Shown here in pieces: positions 55,796 to 64,000 of a DNA stretch of 64,000 nt. A model generated the notes under the pieces. That model was given only the letters and a program-made list of their open reading frames with translations. It was not told where the DNA came from and did not search any database. Made by a program: the position numbers and the translations under genes. The stretch lies in assembly GCA_977020255.1 (NCBI GenBank), contig CDROCS010000253.1, forward strand, positions 3,596,001 to 3,660,000. The letters run 5' to 3'. The DNA comes from Obrimoposthia wandeli. Taxonomy: Eukaryota. Each line of letters begins with the position of its first letter. The first letter of the stretch is position 1.

Positions 55796-55840
55796 CTTAA
55801 TACTCCAGTTATAGGCTTGACTATGAATCGCTTAGACTTC

Positions 55841-55873
55841 CTGAAACGAGCATTTTCAAGTGGATCGGGTATA
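55841..55873. repeat. Isolated right end of the 45961-46275 MITE family
   Basis: CTGAAACGAGCATTTTCAAGTGGATCGGGTATA versus CTGAAACATGCATCTTGATTGGCAACGGGTATA. Confidence 0.5.
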
Positions 55874-55989
55874 AGCTTACCTTCTGATGAATTTAAGTCC
55901 ATGCCACTTAAGTAGGATTTTTTTGATGACAATAAGTAGTACTATCTCGTTATGCTTTTTATCACATCGCTTTGCTTTTTCTTGTTGAC

Positions 55990-58053: not shown

Positions 58054-58371
58054 CTAATGGATTGTCGGTTTTTGCCTATCCCACATGCTTCCTTGCCAGT
58101 TAGAGATGGTTCCAGACGCTTCACAGGTGTCGCAATGCCACTCAATTATGTTGTTTGTAATACATCTTGCTTCAATGTCCCCTTCACAAGACAGCTCATT
58201 CGCTCGGGTATTACATCTCAAGTCAATCTCAATGAGTCGCTGTTCGATTTTGTCAGAAACCGATAACACAATCGTAGTCAGAAATTTGAACACCGCTTTG
58301 GCTTGTTCAGTAAGCGCCAATACGTTGCCCTTCTCGTCAAGAAAATGTCTTAAATCTACTTTTAACGCCAT
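58054..58371 (-). CDS. Hypothetical 105-aa Cys-rich protein
   Basis: ORF with RC...SCEG...EWHCDTC..G.ISNWQGSMWD. Confidence 0.75.
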   Translation of the reverse strand: MALKVDLRHFLDEKGNVLALTEQAKAVFKFLTTIVLSVSDKIEQRLIEIDLRCNTRANELSCEGDIEARCITNNIIEWHCDTCEASGTISNWQGSMWDRQKPTIH

Positions 58372-58394
58372 ATATTTTCCGTTTAATGTGCTTG

Positions 58395-58598
58395 TTAACC
58401 ATTTTCACAGCATACCAAACTTTTAATAAAGTCCTGATATGCTCTAATATCTTTATCTTTTTTCATTGTTTCAGCGTGTTCTGCTTTTGGAGTAATTGCT
58501 AATACCTTCATTTGACTTGTTGATATACCGTAAAGCTCTTTTGAGCTTTTCACTGGTGTTGTTGAATCATCAGCGCCAATTAAGAAAAGTAATGGTTT
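58395..58598 (-). pseudogene. C-terminal remnant of an alpha/beta-hydrolase-like cassette gene
   Basis: Manual translation KPLLFLIGADDSTTP...PKAEHAETM...CCENG*; no in-frame start. The stop lies in GGTTAAC, followed by an attC-like left arm AAGCACATTAAACGG. Confidence 0.5.
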
Positions 58599-58648
58599 TC
58601 ATATTGAGTAACACCCCTTGTTAGGTGCACGATTCTAAATGGTATAGG

Positions 58649-58855
58649 TCAAGTTAGCCATTTAAACGACTTATTTAAAAATTGTTGAGCATCATGTTCA
58701 ACGATTAATCCGTGAGCCATAACGATGATATTTGGTTGCCAAGCGAAGATCTCTTCTAAATTTTTTCTCGCACGAGACTTACCAAAAACGAAACTAAGAC
58801 GCCAATCGATAGGAATTTTACCATTAGGTGCTAATACCCTGCACCTTTGGCACAT
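58649..58855 (-). pseudogene. C-terminal fragment of a DUF4336-family protein
   Basis: LAPNGKIPIDWRLSF...AWQPNIIVMAHG...SFKWL resembles the DUF4336 C-terminus; N-terminal part missing. Confidence 0.65.
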
Positions 58856-58933
58856 AATCGTTGCCAGTAAATAAATAGATAGTAATTATTGAGACAATTT
58901 TTTCATGATAAATACTCTAAAAAACCAATGCTC

Positions 58934-59020
58934 AAATAACAGGCTAAGTAAACGTTGGCTAAAATGTTAAGGAACAAAAACAGCCAACTGTATTTTGTCC
59001 TACTTTAATAGTTTGTATGT
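58934..59020 (-). repeat. Degenerate attC site
   Basis: Shares GTTGGCTAAAATGTT.AGGAAC.AAAA...AACTG..TT..GTCCTA.TTTA with 62976-63076; directly downstream of the 59035 gene. Confidence 0.65.
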
Positions 59021-59034
59021 TTTACTACAACGTA

Positions 59035-59238
59035 CTAGTTAACAACAGCTTTACGTTCCTTTTCATATTCTTCGTAAGATTTACTTTTAACCTTTGTGCA
59101 CTCTGTATACTGTTGCTCTGTTTTAGCCTTATTAATACACTCACTTTTTTGGTAGTCTTGTCCTACTTGGTATAAATCTTTGCTACTACAAGCTGTTAGG
59201 GTGATTAAAAATAAAAGGGAAACAACTAAATTACTCAT
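59035..59238 (-). CDS. Small lipoprotein (cassette-like)
   Basis: Lipobox LTAC, two further Cys, followed by an attC-like site. Confidence 0.8.
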   Translation of the reverse strand: MSNLVVSLLFLITLTACSSKDLYQVGQDYQKSECINKAKTEQQYTECTKVKSKSYEEYEKERKAVVN

Positions 59239-59566
59239 AAAATAACCTCAAAAAAATCTGATATTAAAATTCATTAATCATAGAGTGATTGATTACTCAT
59301 AAAGTTCAACAACAGATGAATATTGATCGTAATGACGCTTTATTATATGTTCCATGATTAACCACTTTGGTAACAATTAAATAAATAACTATCCGCCAAA
59401 GTGGCACTTAAACTGCTTGTATGGATAATAAATTACATAAACTCATTGAAAGTTGTTACGAATGAAAAATGGCATAATCCAGAGCGATGTAGATAGCAAT
59501 GATGTAGGGATCCATTATAATGCCATAGCAGCTATACACACGTATTTAAGAGATATTAAAAAGACC

Positions 59567-60328
59567 ATGGATATCAATGGAAAATGTATCTTATCTACAG
59601 CAGATGAGCACGGCCCGATTTATGTTTACCAAACAAGGACCAGCCGAATTCTCAGCTTTGATGGGCAAAGATATCAAAGCTCAATGAAACTCAACAACAT
59701 TAATGGATTACATCTCGTCTACACCCAGGCCATGATGGCGGGTTTATTTTTTATCCCCACAGTAAAAACAGCCACCGTCATGGGGCTAGGTGCCGGCTCT
59801 ATGGCAAAGAAACTGCTCAGTAGTTTCTCCGAATTAAACGTACACGCGATTGAGTACCGTGAAGCAGTGGTAAAGACCGCAACAGAATATTTTTACTTGC
59901 CCGACACTGAACGCCTATTTATCTATATAGACGATGCTGTGAACTACATAAAAAATACCGTTATTAAAAGCGATATTATCTTTTCAGATCTATACAAATC
60001 ACAAGGTATGGAACCAAAACAAGTACAACTATCCTACTTGCGTGATTGTAAAAATTCACTCAAAAAACAAGGTGTCCTCGTACTCAATATCTGCCATACG
60101 ACTCTTAAATTACGAGAAGAGTTAAATGAATTACTCGCGCTAGAATTTGAAAACCAACTACTCAGTTTCGAAGTAGACAGTGGAAACACGATCGTACTCG
60201 CATTCAAAAACGACATCCCTTCGATAAACGAAGAAGAGCTACTTGCTAGAAGTAAATGCTTGCAAGAGAAGATGAACATTCCGATGGAACGTTATGCCAA
60301 ATTACTATGCGATACACAAAACTTATGA
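59567..60328 (+). CDS. Spermidine-synthase-like SAM methyltransferase (frame open from 59453; family-like sequence starts at ATG 59567)
   Basis: HLVYTQAMM, MGLGAGSMA, AIEYREAVV, DIIFSDLY. Confidence 0.85.
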   Translation: MDINGKCILSTADEHGPIYVYQTRTSRILSFDGQRYQSSMKLNNINGLHLVYTQAMMAGLFFIPTVKTATVMGLGAGSMAKKLLSSFSELNVHAIEYREAVVKTATEYFYLPDTERLFIYIDDAVNYIKNTVIKSDIIFSDLYKSQGMEPKQVQLSYLRDCKNSLKKQGVLVLNICHTTLKLREELNELLALEFENQLLSFEVDSGNTIVLAFKNDIPSINEEELLARSKCLQEKMNIPMERYAKLLCDTQNL

Positions 60329-60797
60329 GAATTTTTGATAGCTTTCCTAGTGCAGGACCGCAATTGGCACCACCATTATTATATGCATTACCTATCAACC
60401 TCCCCATAAGCCTTGCTGAAGTTGGGTTGTGACTTTTTATATAATAGAGCTGAAGCACATCAACATATAGGTGTGTATCACTGTCTGATTTATTATTAAC
60501 CAGCACAAAACCTCTTTCTTCGAAGCTAGCTTTTAAGAAAGATCTAACAATTACTTCCAATTTATCGTTTGATAAGACTTCATATTCATTACCCAATGAA
60601 GAAAGACCGATTCCTAACGTAATATAATTCCGCTTATCCCTTACTTCTAAATATAAAGAGGTAGCATCGACAAGGTGGATAGGCTTAATTTTCAATTTAG
60701 GAGATAACTTTATAAGTTTTGGAGAAGACGAACAGGCACTTAAAGTTAATAAAAAGATAACAAAACTATAAGTAAATAGTCTTTTCATGACACTCAT
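60246..60797 (-). CDS. Lipoprotein, weakly YajG-like; 3' end probably altered
   Basis: Lipobox LSAC, LEVRDKR motif; overlaps the convergent gene by 83 bp; core site GTTAGCC just upstream of the RBS. Confidence 0.6.
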   Translation of the reverse strand: MSVMKRLFTYSFVIFLLTLSACSSSPKLIKLSPKLKIKPIHLVDATSLYLEVRDKRNYITLGIGLSSLGNEYEVLSNDKLEVIVRSFLKASFEERGFVLVNNKSDSDTHLYVDVLQLYYIKSHNPTSARLMGRLIGNAYNNGGANCGPALGKLSKILISFVYRIVIWHNVPSECSSSLASIYF

Positions 60798-60821
60798 CCA
60801 AAACTTTCCTATAAGGCTAAC

Positions 60822-61200
60822 GAGCTTGTAGAATTACTCGTTTTTTATTGTTATTACTAATCTGAGAAACATTAACTGACTTTGCGTAGTGATTCAAATG
60901 AAAGCTTTGTTTTTATTAAATATTATTTTGATCGCGATATTTTTGGAATTAGTGCTTTTTGAGGGGATTACTAACGAAATTTCAGCAATAACGGGAGGAG
61001 TCTCCGTTACCTTGCTGCTATTGCAGGCTATTTCTTAACTTCTCTATATTATGAACTAAGCAATACATCTGCCACTGGATATACACTTTTTCTTGTCCGC
61101 GCAAAGTGAATTTATTCATACCTTTATTGACGGTGATGTTGCCAAATACGGGTCAATCATGCCTAATCGTTATTTACACTATAAAGCAGACGTCGGGCTT
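60822..61200 (-). mobile_element. IS1182-family remnant: transposase C-terminus plus probable right terminal inverted repeat
   Basis: 61152-61018 translates PVFGNITVNKGMNKFTLRGQEKVYIQWQMYCLVHNIEKLRNSLQ*, preceded out of frame by RLGMI. End motif GAGCTTGTAGAATTACTC at 60822. Confidence 0.72.
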
Positions 61201-61255
61201 GTCCAACACCCGAATAAGGTGTCGGCTGCACGACACCTATTCTTATTTGTTATAT
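61201..61255 (-). repeat. Short (55-bp) attC site
   Basis: Minus strand ATATAAC-AAATAAGAATAGGTGTCG-TGCAGC-CGACACCTTATTCGGGT-GTTGGAC, 4 bp after the stop of the 61260 ORF. Confidence 0.78.
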
Positions 61256-61259
61256 GCGT

Positions 61260-61555
61260 TTACTCATTAACTGAAGTGGATTTATGCTCACAAGAAACTA
61301 CTGCTGCACATAAACCACTAAATGCTAACACGCAGACTGAAGAAACTATTCCCCATATTGAAATCATAATTGCGGGACCACTATTACTTGGTACAGTCAT
61401 AGTCATTCCATTTCCAAAATTCGTAGTTCCGCCAGAGCCACCAAAAACACCGTAAATACCTATAAAAACAGTGATTATAAATAAGTACACCAAGCACCCG
61501 AGAAGCAATAAGTAAGATTTTCAGTTCTGATTTTTGAGTATGGATAAAGTTTCAT
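61260..61555 (-). pseudogene. Small membrane-protein cassette gene, probably frameshifted
   Basis: AAAGGA RBS plus ATG at 61555 reads only 26 codons; the hydrophobic body (track ORF 61260-61508) is in another frame. Confidence 0.55.
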
Positions 61556-61596
61556 ATTATTCCTTTAATGTGAATTTAACTTGACGTGGGGAGTCA

Positions 61597-61683
61597 TACC
61601 AAAGCCTTTCTAAGCAGAAAATAATGGTTAGCTATAATTACGAAGCGATGGCCAACTGTTATTTTTCCGTTTAAGCAACTTGT
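61597..61683 (-). repeat. attC site interrupted at its inverse core
   Basis: Close paralogue of 63381-63470 (TAAGC.GA...CGAAGCGATGGCCAACTGTT..TT..CCGTTTAAGCAACTT); ends at TTGT where intron-like sequence begins. Confidence 0.75.
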
Positions 61684-61874
61684 GTACGCCCAGCATGGGC
61701 ATGAACTAATGAGGTAAAAGTCCTCTGTAGGAAGATCACCGTTTAGTTAACTGATTGTTATTAAACACTAAATACTAGCGAATGGCAAGGGCTTAGGCTA
61801 GAGGTGAGTTGGCACAAGACGACGAAACCACGTGATCTAATGGCCACCGTAAATGATGCAGCAGTGCAAAGAAG
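61684..61874 (+). mobile_element. 5' remnant (part of domain I) of a group IIC-attC intron, no RT ORF
   Basis: GTACGCCCAGCATGGGC start, GAGGTAAAAGTCCTC hairpin, ACTAGCGAATGGCAAGGG, CGTAAATGATGCAG; inserted antisense to the cassettes after attC TTGT. Confidence 0.7.
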
Positions 61875-62049
61875 CGAACCAGATGAAAACTCTTTATTGA
61901 CTTGTTAGTTGCTATTTATTAAAAGCGCAATAGAAGCAATAATTTACCATGTTTATTTGATAAGTGAAAGACACAAAAAACATCTCCGTACTACACGAAT
62001 AACGTGAACTTTGAGCCTTAAAAAGTAAAGCTAGCTTGGTAATTAAACT

Positions 62050-62105
62050 GAGTAAGGCGAAAACTTGATTGGGCAAAAGCCAACTGTACTTTGTCCTTGT
62101 TTAAC
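62050..62105 (-). repeat. Heavily degraded attC remnant
   Basis: AGCCAACTGTACTTTGTCC matches AGCCAACTGTATTTTGTCC of the 58934 site; lies just after the CPBP stop. Confidence 0.4.
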
Positions 62106-62108
62106 AGC

Positions 62109-62924
62109 TTAAGTGCAATGACTTAAGGATTCATTAAAGCGCTTTTTATTAAACGCTACAACAAAAATTATAATAATGCCAAATATCGCAAATGCGGCTC
62201 CAAACTCCCCAACGACATATTCAGTTTTACCTGTATTTACGGTCAACAGGTCGAATACATGCTGAATATACAAGTTGTGACTACTGTGCAAAAACAATCC
62301 TGTCCATAAGCTCCCAGATTTAATTCTGAACCAAGTGTAAATGAAATTTGTACCTATAATCATAAGCGAAAAACACACTAACTGATAAAAAACACTCACC
62401 TCAGTGCCGTATAACCCTAGAACGATAATGGGGTAATGCCATACAGACCAAATAACACCAATAATTAATGAAATTTGAAATGGACTATATTTTTGAAACA
62501 ATTTTGGAGTTAAATAGCCACGCCAACCAATCTCTTCGCCTACAGCAGAATGGGCTGCATAAAGAGTACCTTCAGCGAATAGTGCTAGCATTGAAATAAA
62601 TGCAACACTTGTTACATACGTAGAATCTAATCCTCCATAACTGCCTAATGGAGTAAGCCAAACAACTCCGTATACAAGTAAACTGTATAAGATTGGAGTA
62701 AGATAACTCAAGACTTGGTATTTAACTTTACCAAGTCTCCAACCAAATGATTTTAAATTATTTTTAAATAAAAAAGCAGTTAATAAGCCTGATAAACCGG
62801 GGCCCCATGCAAAACCTAAAAGCCATCCAGTATTATCAGTTGTTACCCACAAATAAGTAAAAATAGAACTTATTGAAAATGTTAAGATCAAAAATATGCA
62901 GACTTCAAACCTTACATTTTTCAA
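62109..62924 (-). CDS. CPBP (CAAX/Abi) intramembrane metalloprotease
   Basis: GEEIGWRGY, GVIWSVWHYP, HSSHN motifs. Confidence 0.92.
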   Translation of the reverse strand: MKNVRFEVCIFLILTFSISSIFTYLWVTTDNTGWLLGFAWGPGLSGLLTAFLFKNNLKSFGWRLGKVKYQVLSYLTPILYSLLVYGVVWLTPLGSYGGLDSTYVTSVAFISMLALFAEGTLYAAHSAVGEEIGWRGYLTPKLFQKYSPFQISLIIGVIWSVWHYPIIVLGLYGTEVSVFYQLVCFSLMIIGTNFIYTWFRIKSGSLWTGLFLHSSHNLYIQHVFDLLTVNTGKTEYVVGEFGAAFAIFGIIIIFVVAFNKKRFNESLSHCT

Positions 62925-62975
62925 TCAATATCTTCCTTATTATTTTAATACACATAACTACAAGAATACTCTAGG

Positions 62976-63076
62976 CACCAACGCCCACGTTAAGGGGCAA
63001 TAATAAAGTTGGCTAAAATGTTGAGGAACGAAAAACAACAAACTGTTTTAAGTCCTAGTTTATTTGCTTGTTATAG
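62976..63076 (-). repeat. attC site (101 bp), both cores intact
   Basis: Minus strand CTATAAC-AAGCAAATAAACTAGGAC...GCCCCTTAACGTGGGC-GTTGGTG, 6 bp after the excalibur gene stop; right end resembles VCR (GCCCCTTAGGCGGGCGTT). Confidence 0.82.
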
Positions 63077-63082
63077 GTTTAA

Positions 63083-63361
63083 TCACCTACCTTTATTAAA
63101 CTGCCTTTCGCATGGAGTACCGTCATTATCACCATCCATTTTGGTATTAGGGCAATGTTCGATGAAGTATTTAGCTTCAGCATAAGACTTCATTTGCGAG
63201 CAATGCTGCCTACCGTCGCACTTAAATTTGGTATTAGATTTCTGCTTTTTAGTTGTAACTTTTTTATCTGGAGCTTTAGAGTACTGGTTAGCTGAACTTG
63301 TAGCAGAAAAAGCTAAAATACAGCACAGGCTTATTAAGATAATTGGATATGAATTTTTCAA
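63083..63361 (-). CDS. Secreted excalibur calcium-binding domain protein
   Basis: Signal peptide; CDGRQHCSQM...CPNTKMDGDNDGTPCE. Confidence 0.88.
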   Translation of the reverse strand: MKNSYPIILISLCCILAFSATSSANQYSKAPDKKVTTKKQKSNTKFKCDGRQHCSQMKSYAEAKYFIEHCPNTKMDGDNDGTPCERQFNKGR

Positions 63362-63380
63362 TGTACACCTTCCTTGTGGA

Positions 63381-63470
63381 ACCTATAGACTTGCTAAGCG
63401 GATAAAAACAGTTGGCTATAATCGCGAAGCGATGGCCAACTGTTTTTATTCCGTTTAAGCAACTTATATG
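63381..63470 (-). repeat. attC site with both core GTT triplets destroyed
   Basis: Perfect 15-bp inner IR ATAAAAACAGTTGGC/GCCAACTGTTTTTAT; ends ACCTATAG (for ACCTAAC) and CAACTT-ATATG (GTT missing). Confidence 0.75.
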
Positions 63471-63473
63471 ATT

Positions 63474-63851
63474 TTATAAGTGACTACCCGCGTAATGGGC
63501 AATTGCATCACCTAAATAATTAACCATTTCTGGATGATACGAATTGTGAAACTTTTTCATATCGTCATTTTCTTTATAAAATATTCCCATGCCTATATAT
63601 GCTTCTTTGGATGGGGTATAGAAACGACAAGCTATTTCAAAGTGTTCTTTCATTAACTCTTGAACACTTTCATTATCAACGGCTGTCTCATCGGCGTACT
63701 TTGCTAATTTTTTATACAGAATATCCCAGTCTTGATAGACAAGCTCTCTATTAACATGCGCCCAATTATCTGTTGTTGATAAGCTGTGAGTTTGCTCCAC
63801 ATTAAGAGCATTTTTACATTTTCCTAAATATTCTTTACTTAATTTATTCAT
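63474..63851 (-). CDS. Stand-alone TipAS antibiotic-recognition-domain protein (ATG 63851; track start 63860 is a TTG)
   Basis: VQELMKEHFEIACRFYTPSKEAYIGMGIFY...YLGDAIAHYA resembles TipAS. Confidence 0.75.
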   Translation of the reverse strand: MNKLSKEYLGKCKNALNVEQTHSLSTTDNWAHVNRELVYQDWDILYKKLAKYADETAVDNESVQELMKEHFEIACRFYTPSKEAYIGMGIFYKENDDMKKFHNSYHPEMVNYLGDAIAHYAGSHL

Positions 63852-63854
63852 CTG

Positions 63855-63907
63855 GGACAACCAGCTGCGCTTAAGTGTAGTGTCCGACTTGAATTATCTT
63901 GTTATTT
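63855..63907 (-). repeat. Short attC-like site upstream of the TipAS cassette
   Basis: Minus strand AAATAAC-AAGATA-ATTCAAGT...ACTTAAG...GTTGTCC; TT(C)AAGT/ACTTAA pairing with an extrahelical base; ATG starts 4 nt after the core. Confidence 0.55.
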
Positions 63908-64000
63908 GATGGTATCGGAAAACTACTAACGATAACAAGAGCTTTAATAAGTTTGGCGGCCCGACCGTAGAACTAAAAAGTGCCCAGCGCCACGACTAAC

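What the first reader, a model, noticed from the sequence alone, without database searches (positions are those of the whole stretch)
58054..64000. Unannotated, decaying integron cassette array (CALIN-like) at the window end
Seen: short minus-strand genes each followed within a few bp by imperfect palindromes starting with a TAAC-type inverse core and ending in a GTT core. Sites are at 63855-907, 63381-470, 62976-63076, about 62050-105, 61597-683, 61201-255 and 58934-59020, with partial arms at about 61875-908, 60815-821, 58606-626 (collapsed ACCTAAC-AAGGGGT-GTTACTC) and 58372-400. Two long subfamilies recur (58934/62050/62976 and 61597/63381) plus short types. Established: this is the architecture of integron cassettes. 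No intI is in the window; orientation predicts attI/intI, if present, beyond base 64000. The cargo (TipAS, excalibur, CPBP protease, lipoproteins) is typical adaptive cassette content.
Basis: partly seen in the sequence, partly recalled or inferred. Interest (0 to 1): 0.72.

Follow-up and report, generated by a model that had tools for sequence, protein, structure and literature searches.

The report
Decaying tail of integrase-less integron array
The last 5.6 kb of the window is the old, eroding far end of a 21-kb integron gene-cassette array in a Colwellia chromosome; the array keeps its docking site (attI) but has no integrase gene of its own, which is a known kind of element (CALIN).

Summary
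A covariance model built from 70 attC sites lying beside intI genes of related Colwelliaceae finds four clear attC sites on the minus strand (58923-59018, 61597-61685, 62976-63076, 63381-63471; 50-60 bits).

The window is part of a 4.68-Mb Colwellia contig. The array runs 15 kb past base 64000, through eight better attC sites (six at 75-99 bits, one of 22), to an attI/promoter head. No intI follows the head, and none lies in the next 85 kb. The only intact intI lies 126 kb before the array's near end.

The window part is truly decaying. Four of five long sites have lost the AAC/GTT core triplets, against 10 of 254 in relatives. Three sites are internally collapsed, there are intron and IS fossils, and three genes are truncated or frameshifted.

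C. psychrerythraea ND2E has the same flank, an attC array of wholly different cassettes, and the same intI-less head junction. The integrase-less state therefore predates the species split, which suggests (not shown) servicing in trans.

This is a new member of a known kind. The scan has already noted integrase-less arrays that keep attI in an Oleispira-like bacterium of this same assembly.

The parts
58054..58371 (-). 105-aa ORF at the distal edge; conserved flank or fixed last unit, not an exchanged cassette
   Evidence: 82.5% identical and in the same place next to the AraC gene in C. psychrerythraea ND2E, up to window 58364. Absent at the AraC locus of Colwellia sp. 12G3. No Pfam match.
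58360..58400 (-). terminal attC, internally collapsed (R''-L'' and R' kept, about 58 central positions lost); the array ends at G|TT 58366/58365
   Evidence: R1 15.4 bits, alignment; sequence.
58395..58603 (-). frameshifted ORF remnant (ATG at 58603 stops after 10 codons; a 52-aa frame follows)
   Evidence: Read from the sequence; no Pfam match.
58606..58626 (-). attC collapsed to its two core boxes (ACCTAAC-AAGGGGT-GTTACTC)
   Evidence: R1 10.8 bits with filters off; sequence.
58649..58855 (-). 5'-truncated gene remnant: the C-terminal 68 aa of a protein that is 228 aa long in a Vibrio integron array
   Evidence: 57% identity to L095 3453-3656, inside a 228-aa ORF of an intI-linked array.
58923..59018 (-). 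long-type attC with both core triplets mutated (R' GTT to ATT)
   Evidence: R1 56.9 bits.
59035..59238 (-). 67-aa lipoprotein cassette gene (lipobox LTAC)
   Evidence: ORF and sequence; no Pfam match.
59453..60328 (+). spermidine-synthase-like methyltransferase gene, opposite strand, with no attC; not a normal cassette
   Evidence: Pfam PF01564. An 85% identical copy in C. piezophila has no attC nearby.
60246..60797 (-). lipoprotein gene (lipobox LSAC); its cassette starts at the R' core 60815-60822
   Evidence: ORF; weak Pfam Lipoprotein_16 match.
60815..60822 (-). R' core (CGTTAGCC) left beside an IS end
   Evidence: Sequence. The full IS copy in L017 sits in the same way at an R' core, with CGTTG on both sides.
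60823..61169 (-). remnant of an IS1182-like element (right inverted repeat and transposase C-terminus)
   Evidence: 85-90% identity to copies in L017, L019 and L032; the L017 copy carries Pfam DDE_Tnp_1_6.
61201..61255 (-). short hairpin site with ATATAAC and GTTGGAC cores; attC status less sure
   Evidence: DNA fold z -2.6. Recurs with a conserved 35-nt tail in arrays 1 and 2 and on contig C2866. R1 only 8.5 bits.
61260..61557 (-). small membrane-protein gene, apparently frameshifted (ATG at 61557 stops after 26 codons; an 82-aa frame follows)
   Evidence: Read from the sequence.
61572..61596 (-). remnant of an IS110-family element end, abutting the R' side of the next attC
   Evidence: The same GACTCCCCACGTCAAGTTAAA follows the attC at L021 3581-3680, next to a degenerate IS110 copy.
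61597..61685 (-). long-type attC; R' GTT is now TTT, and R'' is cut by the intron fossil
   Evidence: R1 50.3 bits; alignment with family members.
61686..61873 (+). fossil of the 5' end of a group II intron inserted in the attC R'' box, opposite to the cassettes
   Evidence: About 90% identical to the 5' roughly 280 nt of the intact intron in L017. That intron has Rfam group-II hits and an RT/maturase gene.
61875..61908 (-). R''-side stub of another attC (bottom strand GACTTGTTAG)
   Evidence: Sequence.
61912..62076 (-). 54-aa ORF cassette
   Evidence: Homologues (62% and 52-73% identity) lie between attC sites upstream of intI in L039 and L064.
62077..62114 (-). 5' half of the CPBP cassette's attC (R'' with the 3-nt loss, then L'' and the 5' stem arm); the 3' half is gone
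   Evidence: R1 14.5 bits over 62008-62114, with only the 5' half aligning.
62109..62924 (-). CPBP / Rce1-like intramembrane protease cassette gene
   Evidence: Pfam PF02517, E 4e-13.
62976..63076 (-). long-type attC with both cores intact (CTATAAC, GTTGGTG) but 12 non-pairing positions in the stems
   Evidence: R1 52.3 bits, alignment; DNA fold no better than shuffles.
63083..63361 (-). Excalibur-domain secreted protein cassette gene
   Evidence: Pfam PF05901, E 2e-10; a homologue lies in the array of L072.
63381..63471 (-). long-type attC with a near-perfect stem but both core boxes destroyed
   Evidence: R1 59.6 bits; DNA fold -25.8 kcal/mol, z -8.7.
63474..63851 (-). TipAS-domain protein cassette gene
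   Evidence: Pfam PF07739, E 4e-15.
63855..63907 (-). collapsed attC of the gene-less cassette (first 28 nt as in the 95-nt form, centre lost)
   Evidence: Alignment with three other copies.
63873..64000 (-). gene-less repeated cassette (runs on to about 64130 beyond the window; this copy has a 97-nt internal deletion)
   Evidence: 93-97% identical copies in arrays 1 and 2, each starting at a core site behind a different attC or behind attI.

Best explanation
Window 58365-64000 is the attI-distal, oldest end of a 20.7-kb integron cassette array. The array spans C253 3654365-3675044 of a 4.68-Mb Colwellia chromosome-sized contig. Cassettes read on the minus strand.

The array ends, 15 kb beyond the window, in a complete attI/promoter head: attI core CTG|TTAT, an 18-19-bp inverted repeat and a LexA-box-like sequence. 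The head is not followed by intI, so by definition the array is a CALIN.

The chromosome has four such heads:
- one with an intact intI (3527236-3528201)
- one with a broken intI (3018453-3019194)
- two without intI: this one, and one at 2972251 that I could not inspect

How it works, as inference: new cassettes can enter only at attI and leave by attC x attC recombination, and the recombinase must come in trans from the one intact IntI. The attI-proximal 15 kb still has canonical sites and can take part.

The tail in the window no longer can. Point changes at the crossover G of R', 3-nt losses in R'', internal collapses, an intron fossil and IS remnants have frozen its cassettes in place, and several of their genes are decaying.

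Shown: the array, its extent, the head, the absence of intI, the decay, and orthology with ND2E. Inferred: recombination in trans, and age increasing with distance from attI.
For: Identity of the sites:
- Model R1 hits only in the array, always on the minus strand.
- The same subfamilies lie upstream of intI on this and other contigs.

Extent:
- L017 sites score 87.4, 74.6, 88.9, 89.9 and 85.3 bits; L021 sites score 77.4, 22 and 99.3 bits.

Head:
- L021 5036-5222 is 99.4% identical to the region just upstream of the broken intI at 3.018 Mb.
- It is 85-90% identical to the regions upstream of intI in Colwellia sp. 12G3 and C. psychrerythraea ND2E.
- Homology stops about 25-45 nt before the intI start codon.

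No intI:
- tblastn with the contig's own IntI finds nothing in 3660001-3760000.
- The TIGR02249 scan of the assembly gives no hit there.

Decay:
- Both core triplets are intact in 1 of 5 long window sites, against 244 of 254 in relatives (p 3e-5).
- R' GTT is intact in 1 of 5 window sites, against 8 of 8 in the proximal part (p 0.007).
- There are collapsed sites, a truncated gene and an intron fossil.

Age and turnover:
- ND2E contig C57 has the same AraC/105-aa flank (82%) abutting at least 13 co-oriented attC sites.
- No cassette is shared with this array.
- ND2E contig C40 has the same intI-less head junction next to czcA.

Exchange between arrays:
- The gene-less cassette occurs in arrays 1, 2 and 3, each time behind a different attC or behind attI.

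Organism:
- IntI is 93% identical to that of Colwellia sp. 12G3.
Against: - The attC model is my own, lineage-specific and partly tuned to canonical AACAAG sites. IntegronFinder's model was not run.
- Lower bit scores in the window could partly reflect subfamily differences rather than decay. The loss of core triplets does not depend on the model.
- Nothing shows that the intact IntI acts on this array. Apart from the gene-less cassette (93-97% identity) and shared IS and intron copies, no cassette is shared between the three arrays.
- The ND2E array and the ND2E head are on different contigs, so their linkage is assumed.
- Three other Colwellia genomes have neither a head nor attC sites beside czcA. 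The locus is therefore not ancestral to the genus, and intI may never have been here.
- Two stretches (59.2-60.8 kb, and the 61201 hairpin) do not fit the cassette pattern.
Confidence: 0.85

Rival explanations
1. A piece broken off a complete integron: an IS-mediated inversion or translocation split the array of integron 1 or 2 and left these cassettes far from intI. This is the usual proposed origin of CALINs in genomes that encode IntI.
For: IS110-family and IS1182-like copies lie inside the array, and related copies lie in arrays 1 and 2. Cury et al. 2016 (PMC4889954) found IS next to 38% of CALINs, and more often in genomes that encode IntI.
Against: A split array would not carry its own attI head, and this one does. 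The same head-without-intI junction and the same distal flank exist in ND2E, so the arrangement is old and stable rather than a recent break.
Confidence: 0.08
2. A wholly dead fossil: no integrase has acted here since intI was lost or left behind. Differences from ND2E come from ordinary deletion, homologous recombination between attC repeats and horizontal replacement. The good proximal sites are simply younger or slower to decay.
For: No protein-coding cassette is shared at high identity with arrays 1 or 2. ND2E's array at this locus also shows many broken R' boxes, with 5 of 11 intact. The 99.4% identity of the head to that of array 2 points to homologous recombination or gene conversion.
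Against: All eight proximal sites keep R' GTT. The cassette content of two species with 82% identical flanks has turned over completely, down to the last unit. The gene-less cassette sits behind different partners at core sites in three arrays.
Confidence: 0.3
3. Not integron sites at all: a family of intergenic palindromic repeats (REP/MITE-like) that happen to follow small genes.
For: Most window sites fold no better than shuffled sequence, and several lack AAC/GTT.
Against: The same families lie only in co-oriented arrays upstream of intI in this and dozens of related genomes. There the sites show 18 of 25 covarying pairs and linked 7-nt cores between neighbouring sites. The array ends in a region homologous to intI-proximal attI regions.
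Confidence: 0.02

Closest known systems
[quoted passage not shown] 2016, PMC4889954; IntegronFinder 2, PMC9024848)
   Same: Co-oriented attC sites with small cassette genes and no intI nearby. The genome encodes IntI elsewhere, there are IS inside and next to the array, and the cargo is mostly of unknown function.
   Different: With about 17 sites it is larger than most CALINs: 83% have fewer than six, and only 6.6% have more than ten. It keeps a recognisable attI/promoter head, which IntegronFinder does not look for outside classes 1-3. Its integrase-less state is shared with a second species.
Sedentary chromosomal integrons of Vibrio and other marine Gammaproteobacteria
   Same: Long (about 100 nt), homogeneous, species-group-specific attC repeats. 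Cargo includes toxin-antitoxin cassettes (Phd/YoeB here), group IIC-attC introns and IS110-family elements. A LexA box lies in the head.
   Different: No integrase in cis. Only about 21 kb long. It is one of four heads on the chromosome.
Xanthomonas integrons with inactivated intI, and CALINs at conserved loci (bioRxiv 10.1101/2025.06.18.660453)
   Same: An integrase-less or integrase-dead array held at the same chromosomal place in related species, with cassette sets that differ between species.
   Different: In Xanthomonas the intI remnant is usually still visible downstream of ilvD. Here there is no remnant, while the head is intact up to about 25-45 nt before where intI would start.
Integrase-less arrays that keep attI in an Oleispira-like bacterium of the same assembly
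   Same: The same pattern: the head and leader survive, intI is cleanly missing, and there are several heads per genome.
   Different: Different genus and different attI sequence. I did not examine those loci.

Membership tests
Integron cassette array / CALIN | Two or more neighbouring sites that fit an attC sequence-and-structure model | tested here: met
   Lineage model R1: four window hits of 50-60 bits, eight more in the next 14 kb, none in the other 57 kb. IntegronFinder's own attC model was not available.
Integron cassette array / CALIN | Sites co-oriented, each at the 3' end of a cassette ORF | tested here: met
   All hits are on the minus strand, 3-20 nt after the stop codons of minus-strand ORFs. 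Exceptions are the plus-strand gene at 59453-60328 and, past base 64000, the plus-strand Phd/YoeB pair (L017 7891-8518).
Integron cassette array / CALIN | No integron integrase gene or pseudogene beside the cluster | tested here: met
   tblastn with the contig's own IntI over 100 kb beyond the window, and the TIGR02249 scan of the assembly.
Functional attC site | R'' ..AAC and R' GTT.. triplets able to pair in the folded bottom strand | tested here: not met
   In the window only 62976-63076 (of five long sites) and the short 61201-61255 keep both. In the attI-proximal part 8 of 8 keep GTT and 6 of 8 keep AAC, with one of the two exceptions interrupted by an intron.
Functional attC site | Recombination by IntI in vivo | not testable with these tools
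   Needs an attC x attI assay.
Complete integron | intI next to attI, divergent from the cassettes | tested here: not met
   The head is present and intI is absent.
Complete integron | attI site at the head of the array | tested here: met
   By homology only: 85-99% identity to the regions immediately upstream of intI in five loci. Variable cassette sequence starts right after CTG|TTA.
Sedentary chromosomal integron | Same chromosomal place across strains or species, with homogeneous attC sites | tested here: inconclusive
   Shared with C. psychrerythraea ND2E. Absent at the czcA or AraC loci of four other Colwellia genomes. The attC sites are homogeneous.
Group IIC-attC intron | Group II ribozyme domains plus an RT/maturase gene, inserted in the R'' box of an attC, antisense to the cassettes | tested here: met
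   L017 copy: Rfam RF02001, RF01998 and RF00029; Pfam RVT_1 and GIIM; flanks CAACTTG|..|TTAGCC. The window fossil 61686-61873 is 90% identical to its 5' end. The IIC subclass itself was not tested.
IS1111-attC group (IS110 family) | DEDD transposase element inserted at a fixed point of attC sites | tested here: inconclusive
   Pfam DEDD_Tnp_IS110 and Transposase_20. Three copies, and one end remnant, abut the R' side of attC sites. The exact target was not analysed.

The most novel reading that the evidence does not exclude
One integrase, several docking heads. In this Colwellia lineage an attI/promoter head without intI has persisted, with full cassette turnover, since before two species split. 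It is one of four heads on the chromosome served by a single intact IntI. The heads are kept alike by gene conversion (99.4% identity between heads 2 and 3). Together with the Oleispira-like cases noted earlier in this scan, this would make 'distributed' integrons a regular but unrecognised architecture, hidden among CALINs because attI is not annotated outside classes 1-3. In such an integron, several attI-headed arrays share one trans-acting integrase.
Probability: 0.3. Interest if true: 0.55.

Novelty: new member of a known kind. Interest (0 to 1): 0.35.

Why it matters
By itself this is an ordinary marine chromosomal cassette array. It is still useful in three ways.

1. It is a clean natural series of attC decay along one array: canonical sites near attI, and broken cores, collapsed stems and dead genes at the far end. 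This shows how cassettes become fixed chromosomal genes.

2. It shows that a CALIN can be a full integron platform minus the integrase gene, and that this state can outlast a speciation. That bears on how CALINs arise and on whether they are still serviced in trans.

3. No paper in the searched library describes Colwellia integrons.

Tried and rejected
- Two home-made energy-based attC scanners failed. AT-rich sites fold weakly, palindromes score on both strands, and the background at -10 kcal/mol was about 0.4 per kb. They were used only to harvest strong seed sites from relatives.
- Rfam has no attC family; its only hits were the group II intron. It found nothing in the gene-less cassette either.
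- I looked for an intI remnant beside the head and for homology of the 200 nt after the head to sequence downstream of intI in other loci. I found none except in the ND2E orthologue. A precise in-place deletion of intI is therefore not shown.
- I looked for cassettes shared with ND2E's array and with arrays 1 and 2. Only attC sites, IS copies, the intron and the gene-less cassette are shared.
- The promoter scan of the head gave no more matches than shuffles, so nothing can be said about Pc.
- The idea that the window array belongs to the intact intI 126 kb away was rejected. That intI faces the other way and has its own array on its other side.

Full report
WHERE THE WINDOW LIES

The window is C253:3596001-3660000 of a 4,677,312-base contig inside a 1.35-Gb, 6912-contig assembly. 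The contig is bacterial.

Its integron integrase is 93% identical to that of Colwellia sp. 12G3 and 88% to that of C. psychrerythraea ND2E. The genes left of the finding are 81-83% identical in DNA to those two genomes. I take it for a Colwellia chromosome.

Other contigs of the assembly (C2866, C666, C5466 and many more) carry further intI genes and the same attC family. The assembly therefore holds several related marine bacteria.

THE OBSERVATION

To test them I needed an attC model. Rfam has none, and my own energy-based scanners could not separate the sites from background. I therefore did the following:
- fetched 80 loci around relatives of the contig's IntI;
- harvested strong hairpins between AAC and GTT from the 10 kb upstream of each intI;
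- aligned 70 non-redundant ones.

The alignment is a textbook attC family of about 100 nt..TAAC-AAG-..TTxAA..GGAC..CAGTTGGCT-loop-AGCCAACT..GCC.CTTAA..GGC-GTTA... Of its 25 predicted pairs, 18 show compensatory changes. Neighbouring sites have matching 7-nt cores, as expected of cassettes that circularise.

The covariance model R1 built from it finds four sites of 50-60 bits in the window: 63381-63471, 62976-63076, 61597-61685 and 58923-59018, all on the minus strand. It finds weak hits at 58360-58400, 62008-62114 and 58606-58626. It finds nothing at all in window 1-57000. The same subfamilies occur, in the same orientation, upstream of intI genes on this and other contigs.

THE WHOLE ELEMENT

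Beyond base 64000 (locus L017 = C253 3660001-3670000; L021 = 3670001-3680000) the array goes on with:
- small minus-strand ORFs and eight more R1 hits (87, 75, 89, 90 and 85 bits in L017; 77, 22 and 99 bits in L021);
- a frameshifted IS1182-like element inserted at an R' core, with CGTTG on both sides;
- an intact group II intron with an RT/maturase gene, sitting antisense in an R'' box (flanks CAACTTG|..|TTAGCC);
- three IS110-family copies abutting attC sites;
- a Phd/YoeB pair.

At L021 5045/5044 the cassette sequence gives way to about 180 nt that are 99.4% identical to the DNA just upstream of a broken intI at C253 3018453. The same stretch is 85-90% identical to the DNA just upstream of intI in Colwellia sp. 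12G3, ND2E and GAB14E.

In all these loci the variable sequence starts right after CTG|TTA, which is the expected attI crossover. The conserved part holds an 18-19-bp inverted repeat and a LexA-type box. In the window's array the homology fades about 25-45 nt before the place where intI would start.

No intI fragment is found there or in the next 85 kb. The universal stress protein gene, a SnoaL-like gene and an RND pump gene follow.

So the array spans C253 3654365-3675044 (20.7 kb, about 17 sites). It has its own attI head and no integrase. The window contains only its far end.

THE OTHER INTEGRON LOCI OF THE CHROMOSOME

- An intact intI (TIGR02249, 470 bits, no stops) lies at 3527236-3528201 on the plus strand, with its own array at lower coordinates.
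- A broken intI (internal loss of about residues 179-224, stops, frame changes) lies at 3018453-3019194, with an array of at least 15 sites. Its flank is syntenic with the intI loci of ND2E, 12G3 and GAB14E.
- A fourth head, 85% identical, lies at 2972251-2972432 with no intI hit near it. I could not read it.

DECAY

The window's sites are worse than those nearer attI, and not only in score. The aligned sequences show the following:
- 63381-63471 has a near-perfect stem (fold -25.8 kcal/mol, z -8.7), but R'' is ..ATAAG.. instead of ..ATAACAAG.. and R' is GTCTATAG instead of GCGTTAT.
- 58923-59018 has R' GCATTGG.
- 61597-61685 has R' GGCTTTGG. Its R'' is cut by a 190-nt fossil of the same group II intron (about 90% identical to the intact copy), and an IS110-end remnant sits on its other side.
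- 62008-62114 is only a 5' half.
- 62976-63076 keeps both cores but has 12 non-pairing positions.
- Three further sites (58360-58400, 58606-58626, 63855-63907) are internally collapsed.

With a sequence profile of the same alignment, both core triplets are intact in 1 of 5 long window sites, against 244 of 254 sites in relatives (p 3e-5). R' GTT is intact in 1 of 5 window sites, against 8 of 8 in the proximal 15 kb (p 0.007).

The cargo decays too:
- 58649-58855 is the last 68 residues of a protein that is 228 residues long in a Vibrio array.
- 58395-58603 and 61260-57 (that is, 61260-61557) look frameshifted.

The distal part of array 1 (L019) and the ND2E array show the same erosion.

AGE

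In C. psychrerythraea ND2E, contig C57 carries the orthologous MFS-AzlCD-AraC block and the 105-aa ORF (82% identity, up to window 58364). It then carries at least 13 co-oriented attC sites over 10 kb, running off the contig. None of its cassettes is shared with this array, not even the last ones.

ND2E contig C40 starts with the same head, followed by the same non-intI sequence and the czcA end (79-85% identity, same junction). The integrase-less head is therefore older than the split of the two species, while the cassette content has turned over completely.

GAB14E, C. piezophila and Colwellia RE-S-Sl-9 have no head or attC sites beside czcA. 12G3 has none beside AraC. So the locus arose in the common ancestor of this species and ND2E. 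Whether intI was ever there cannot be told.

HOW IT LIKELY WORKS

Established integron biology says that cassettes enter at attI and leave by attC x attC recombination on folded bottom strands, with cleavage at the R' G|TT. An array without intI can be processed only by an integrase made elsewhere. The Xanthomonas preprint states this as accepted for CALINs.

Four things here are compatible with such servicing of the attI-proximal part:
- the one intact IntI of the chromosome;
- the canonical proximal sites;
- the turnover since the split from ND2E;
- a gene-less cassette that sits behind attI in array 2 and behind different attC sites in arrays 1 and 3.

None of this proves it. Homologous recombination is also at work: the heads of arrays 2 and 3 are 99.4% identical, while the orthologous heads of the two species are 85% identical.

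The window part has lost the crossover nucleotides and cannot be excised by the integrase. Its cassettes are fixed and drifting.

NOT FITTING THE PATTERN

- The plus-strand spermidine-synthase-like gene at 59453-60328 has no attC. It has an 85% identical copy outside any array in C. piezophila.
- The 61201-61255 hairpin travels with a conserved 35-nt tail in four arrays, while its upstream neighbour differs each time.

KNOWN OR NEW

CALINs, their frequent occurrence in genomes with IntI elsewhere, their link with IS, and conserved CALIN loci are all described (PMC4889954; 10.1101/2022.09.11.507474; 10.1101/2025.06.18.660453).

The library holds no paper on Colwellia integrons. Earlier notes of this scan report integrase-less arrays that keep attI in an Oleispira-like bacterium of the same assembly. 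I did not check those.

This is a new member of a known kind. The retained head and its persistence across species is the one point that goes a little beyond the standard picture.

Noticed in passing
window 63381-63471 and 62105-62114; L017 91-191 and 873-970; L019 2484-2581 and 6000-6096: Six attC sites of this chromosome, from different subfamilies, read ..ATAAG.. where the family reads ..ATAACAAG... This 3-nt loss removes the AAC of R''. Only 1 of 269 sites in related genomes has this form (p 2e-5). The loss sits exactly at the group II intron insertion point (TAA|CAAG). No mechanism was tested.
   Followed up: partly
window 63873-64000, continuing to about 64130; C253 3017898-, 3522273-, 3526181-: A gene-less cassette of about 330 nt occurs in four copies across three arrays, and is the first cassette behind attI of array 2. 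The window copy has a 97-nt deletion and a collapsed attC. There is no Rfam match and only ORFs under 45 aa. It is probably the non-coding cassette family noted earlier in this scan (s1-224250).
   Followed up: partly
C253 2972251-2972432: A fourth attI/promoter head, 85% identical to the one of this array, with no intI hit nearby. It could not be fetched.
   Followed up: no
L021 5070-5088 and 5210-5228 (C253 3675070-3675228): The attI head is bracketed by an 18-19-bp perfect inverted repeat (AATTCCTTCTTTCTACAAG / CTTGTAGAAAGAAGGAATT) that is conserved in all related heads. In the intI-less heads, homology to intI-linked heads fades just past the second arm and a LexA-like box.
   Followed up: partly
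window 61165-61255; L032 2743-2832; L029 8640-8721; L033 5738-5796: A 55-nt hairpin with attC-like cores plus a conserved 35-nt tail recurs as one unit. Its upstream boundary is exactly at TAAC and its upstream neighbour differs each time. This is unlike an ordinary attC, which belongs to the gene before it.
   Followed up: partly
L017 1385-3140 (C253 3661385-3663140): An IS1182-like element with a frameshifted transposase is inserted at an attC R' core, with CGTTG on both sides. Related copies lie in arrays 1 and 2, and a remnant lies at window 60823-61169.
   Followed up: partly
window 55816-55874: A 58-nt intergenic repeat has dozens of 80-93% identical copies in the genomes of Colwellia sp. 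12G3, C. psychrerythraea ND2E and C. piezophila. It looks like a REP/MITE-like element.
   Followed up: no
L021 5480-5600 (C253 3675480-3675600): A short pseudogene copy of the 3' end of the RND pump gene (which itself ends at L021 8016) lies right after the head. In ND2E the head abuts the pump gene itself, so about 2.4 kb (Usp, SnoaL-like and another gene) was inserted here with a duplication.
   Followed up: partly
contigs C2866, C666, C5466, C410, C3921, C5179 and others: Many other contigs of this 1.35-Gb assembly carry the same attC family. Four contigs carry intI genes over the TIGR02249 cut-off (three intact, one with an in-frame stop). The assembly is a mixture that includes several related marine bacteria.
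   Followed up: no
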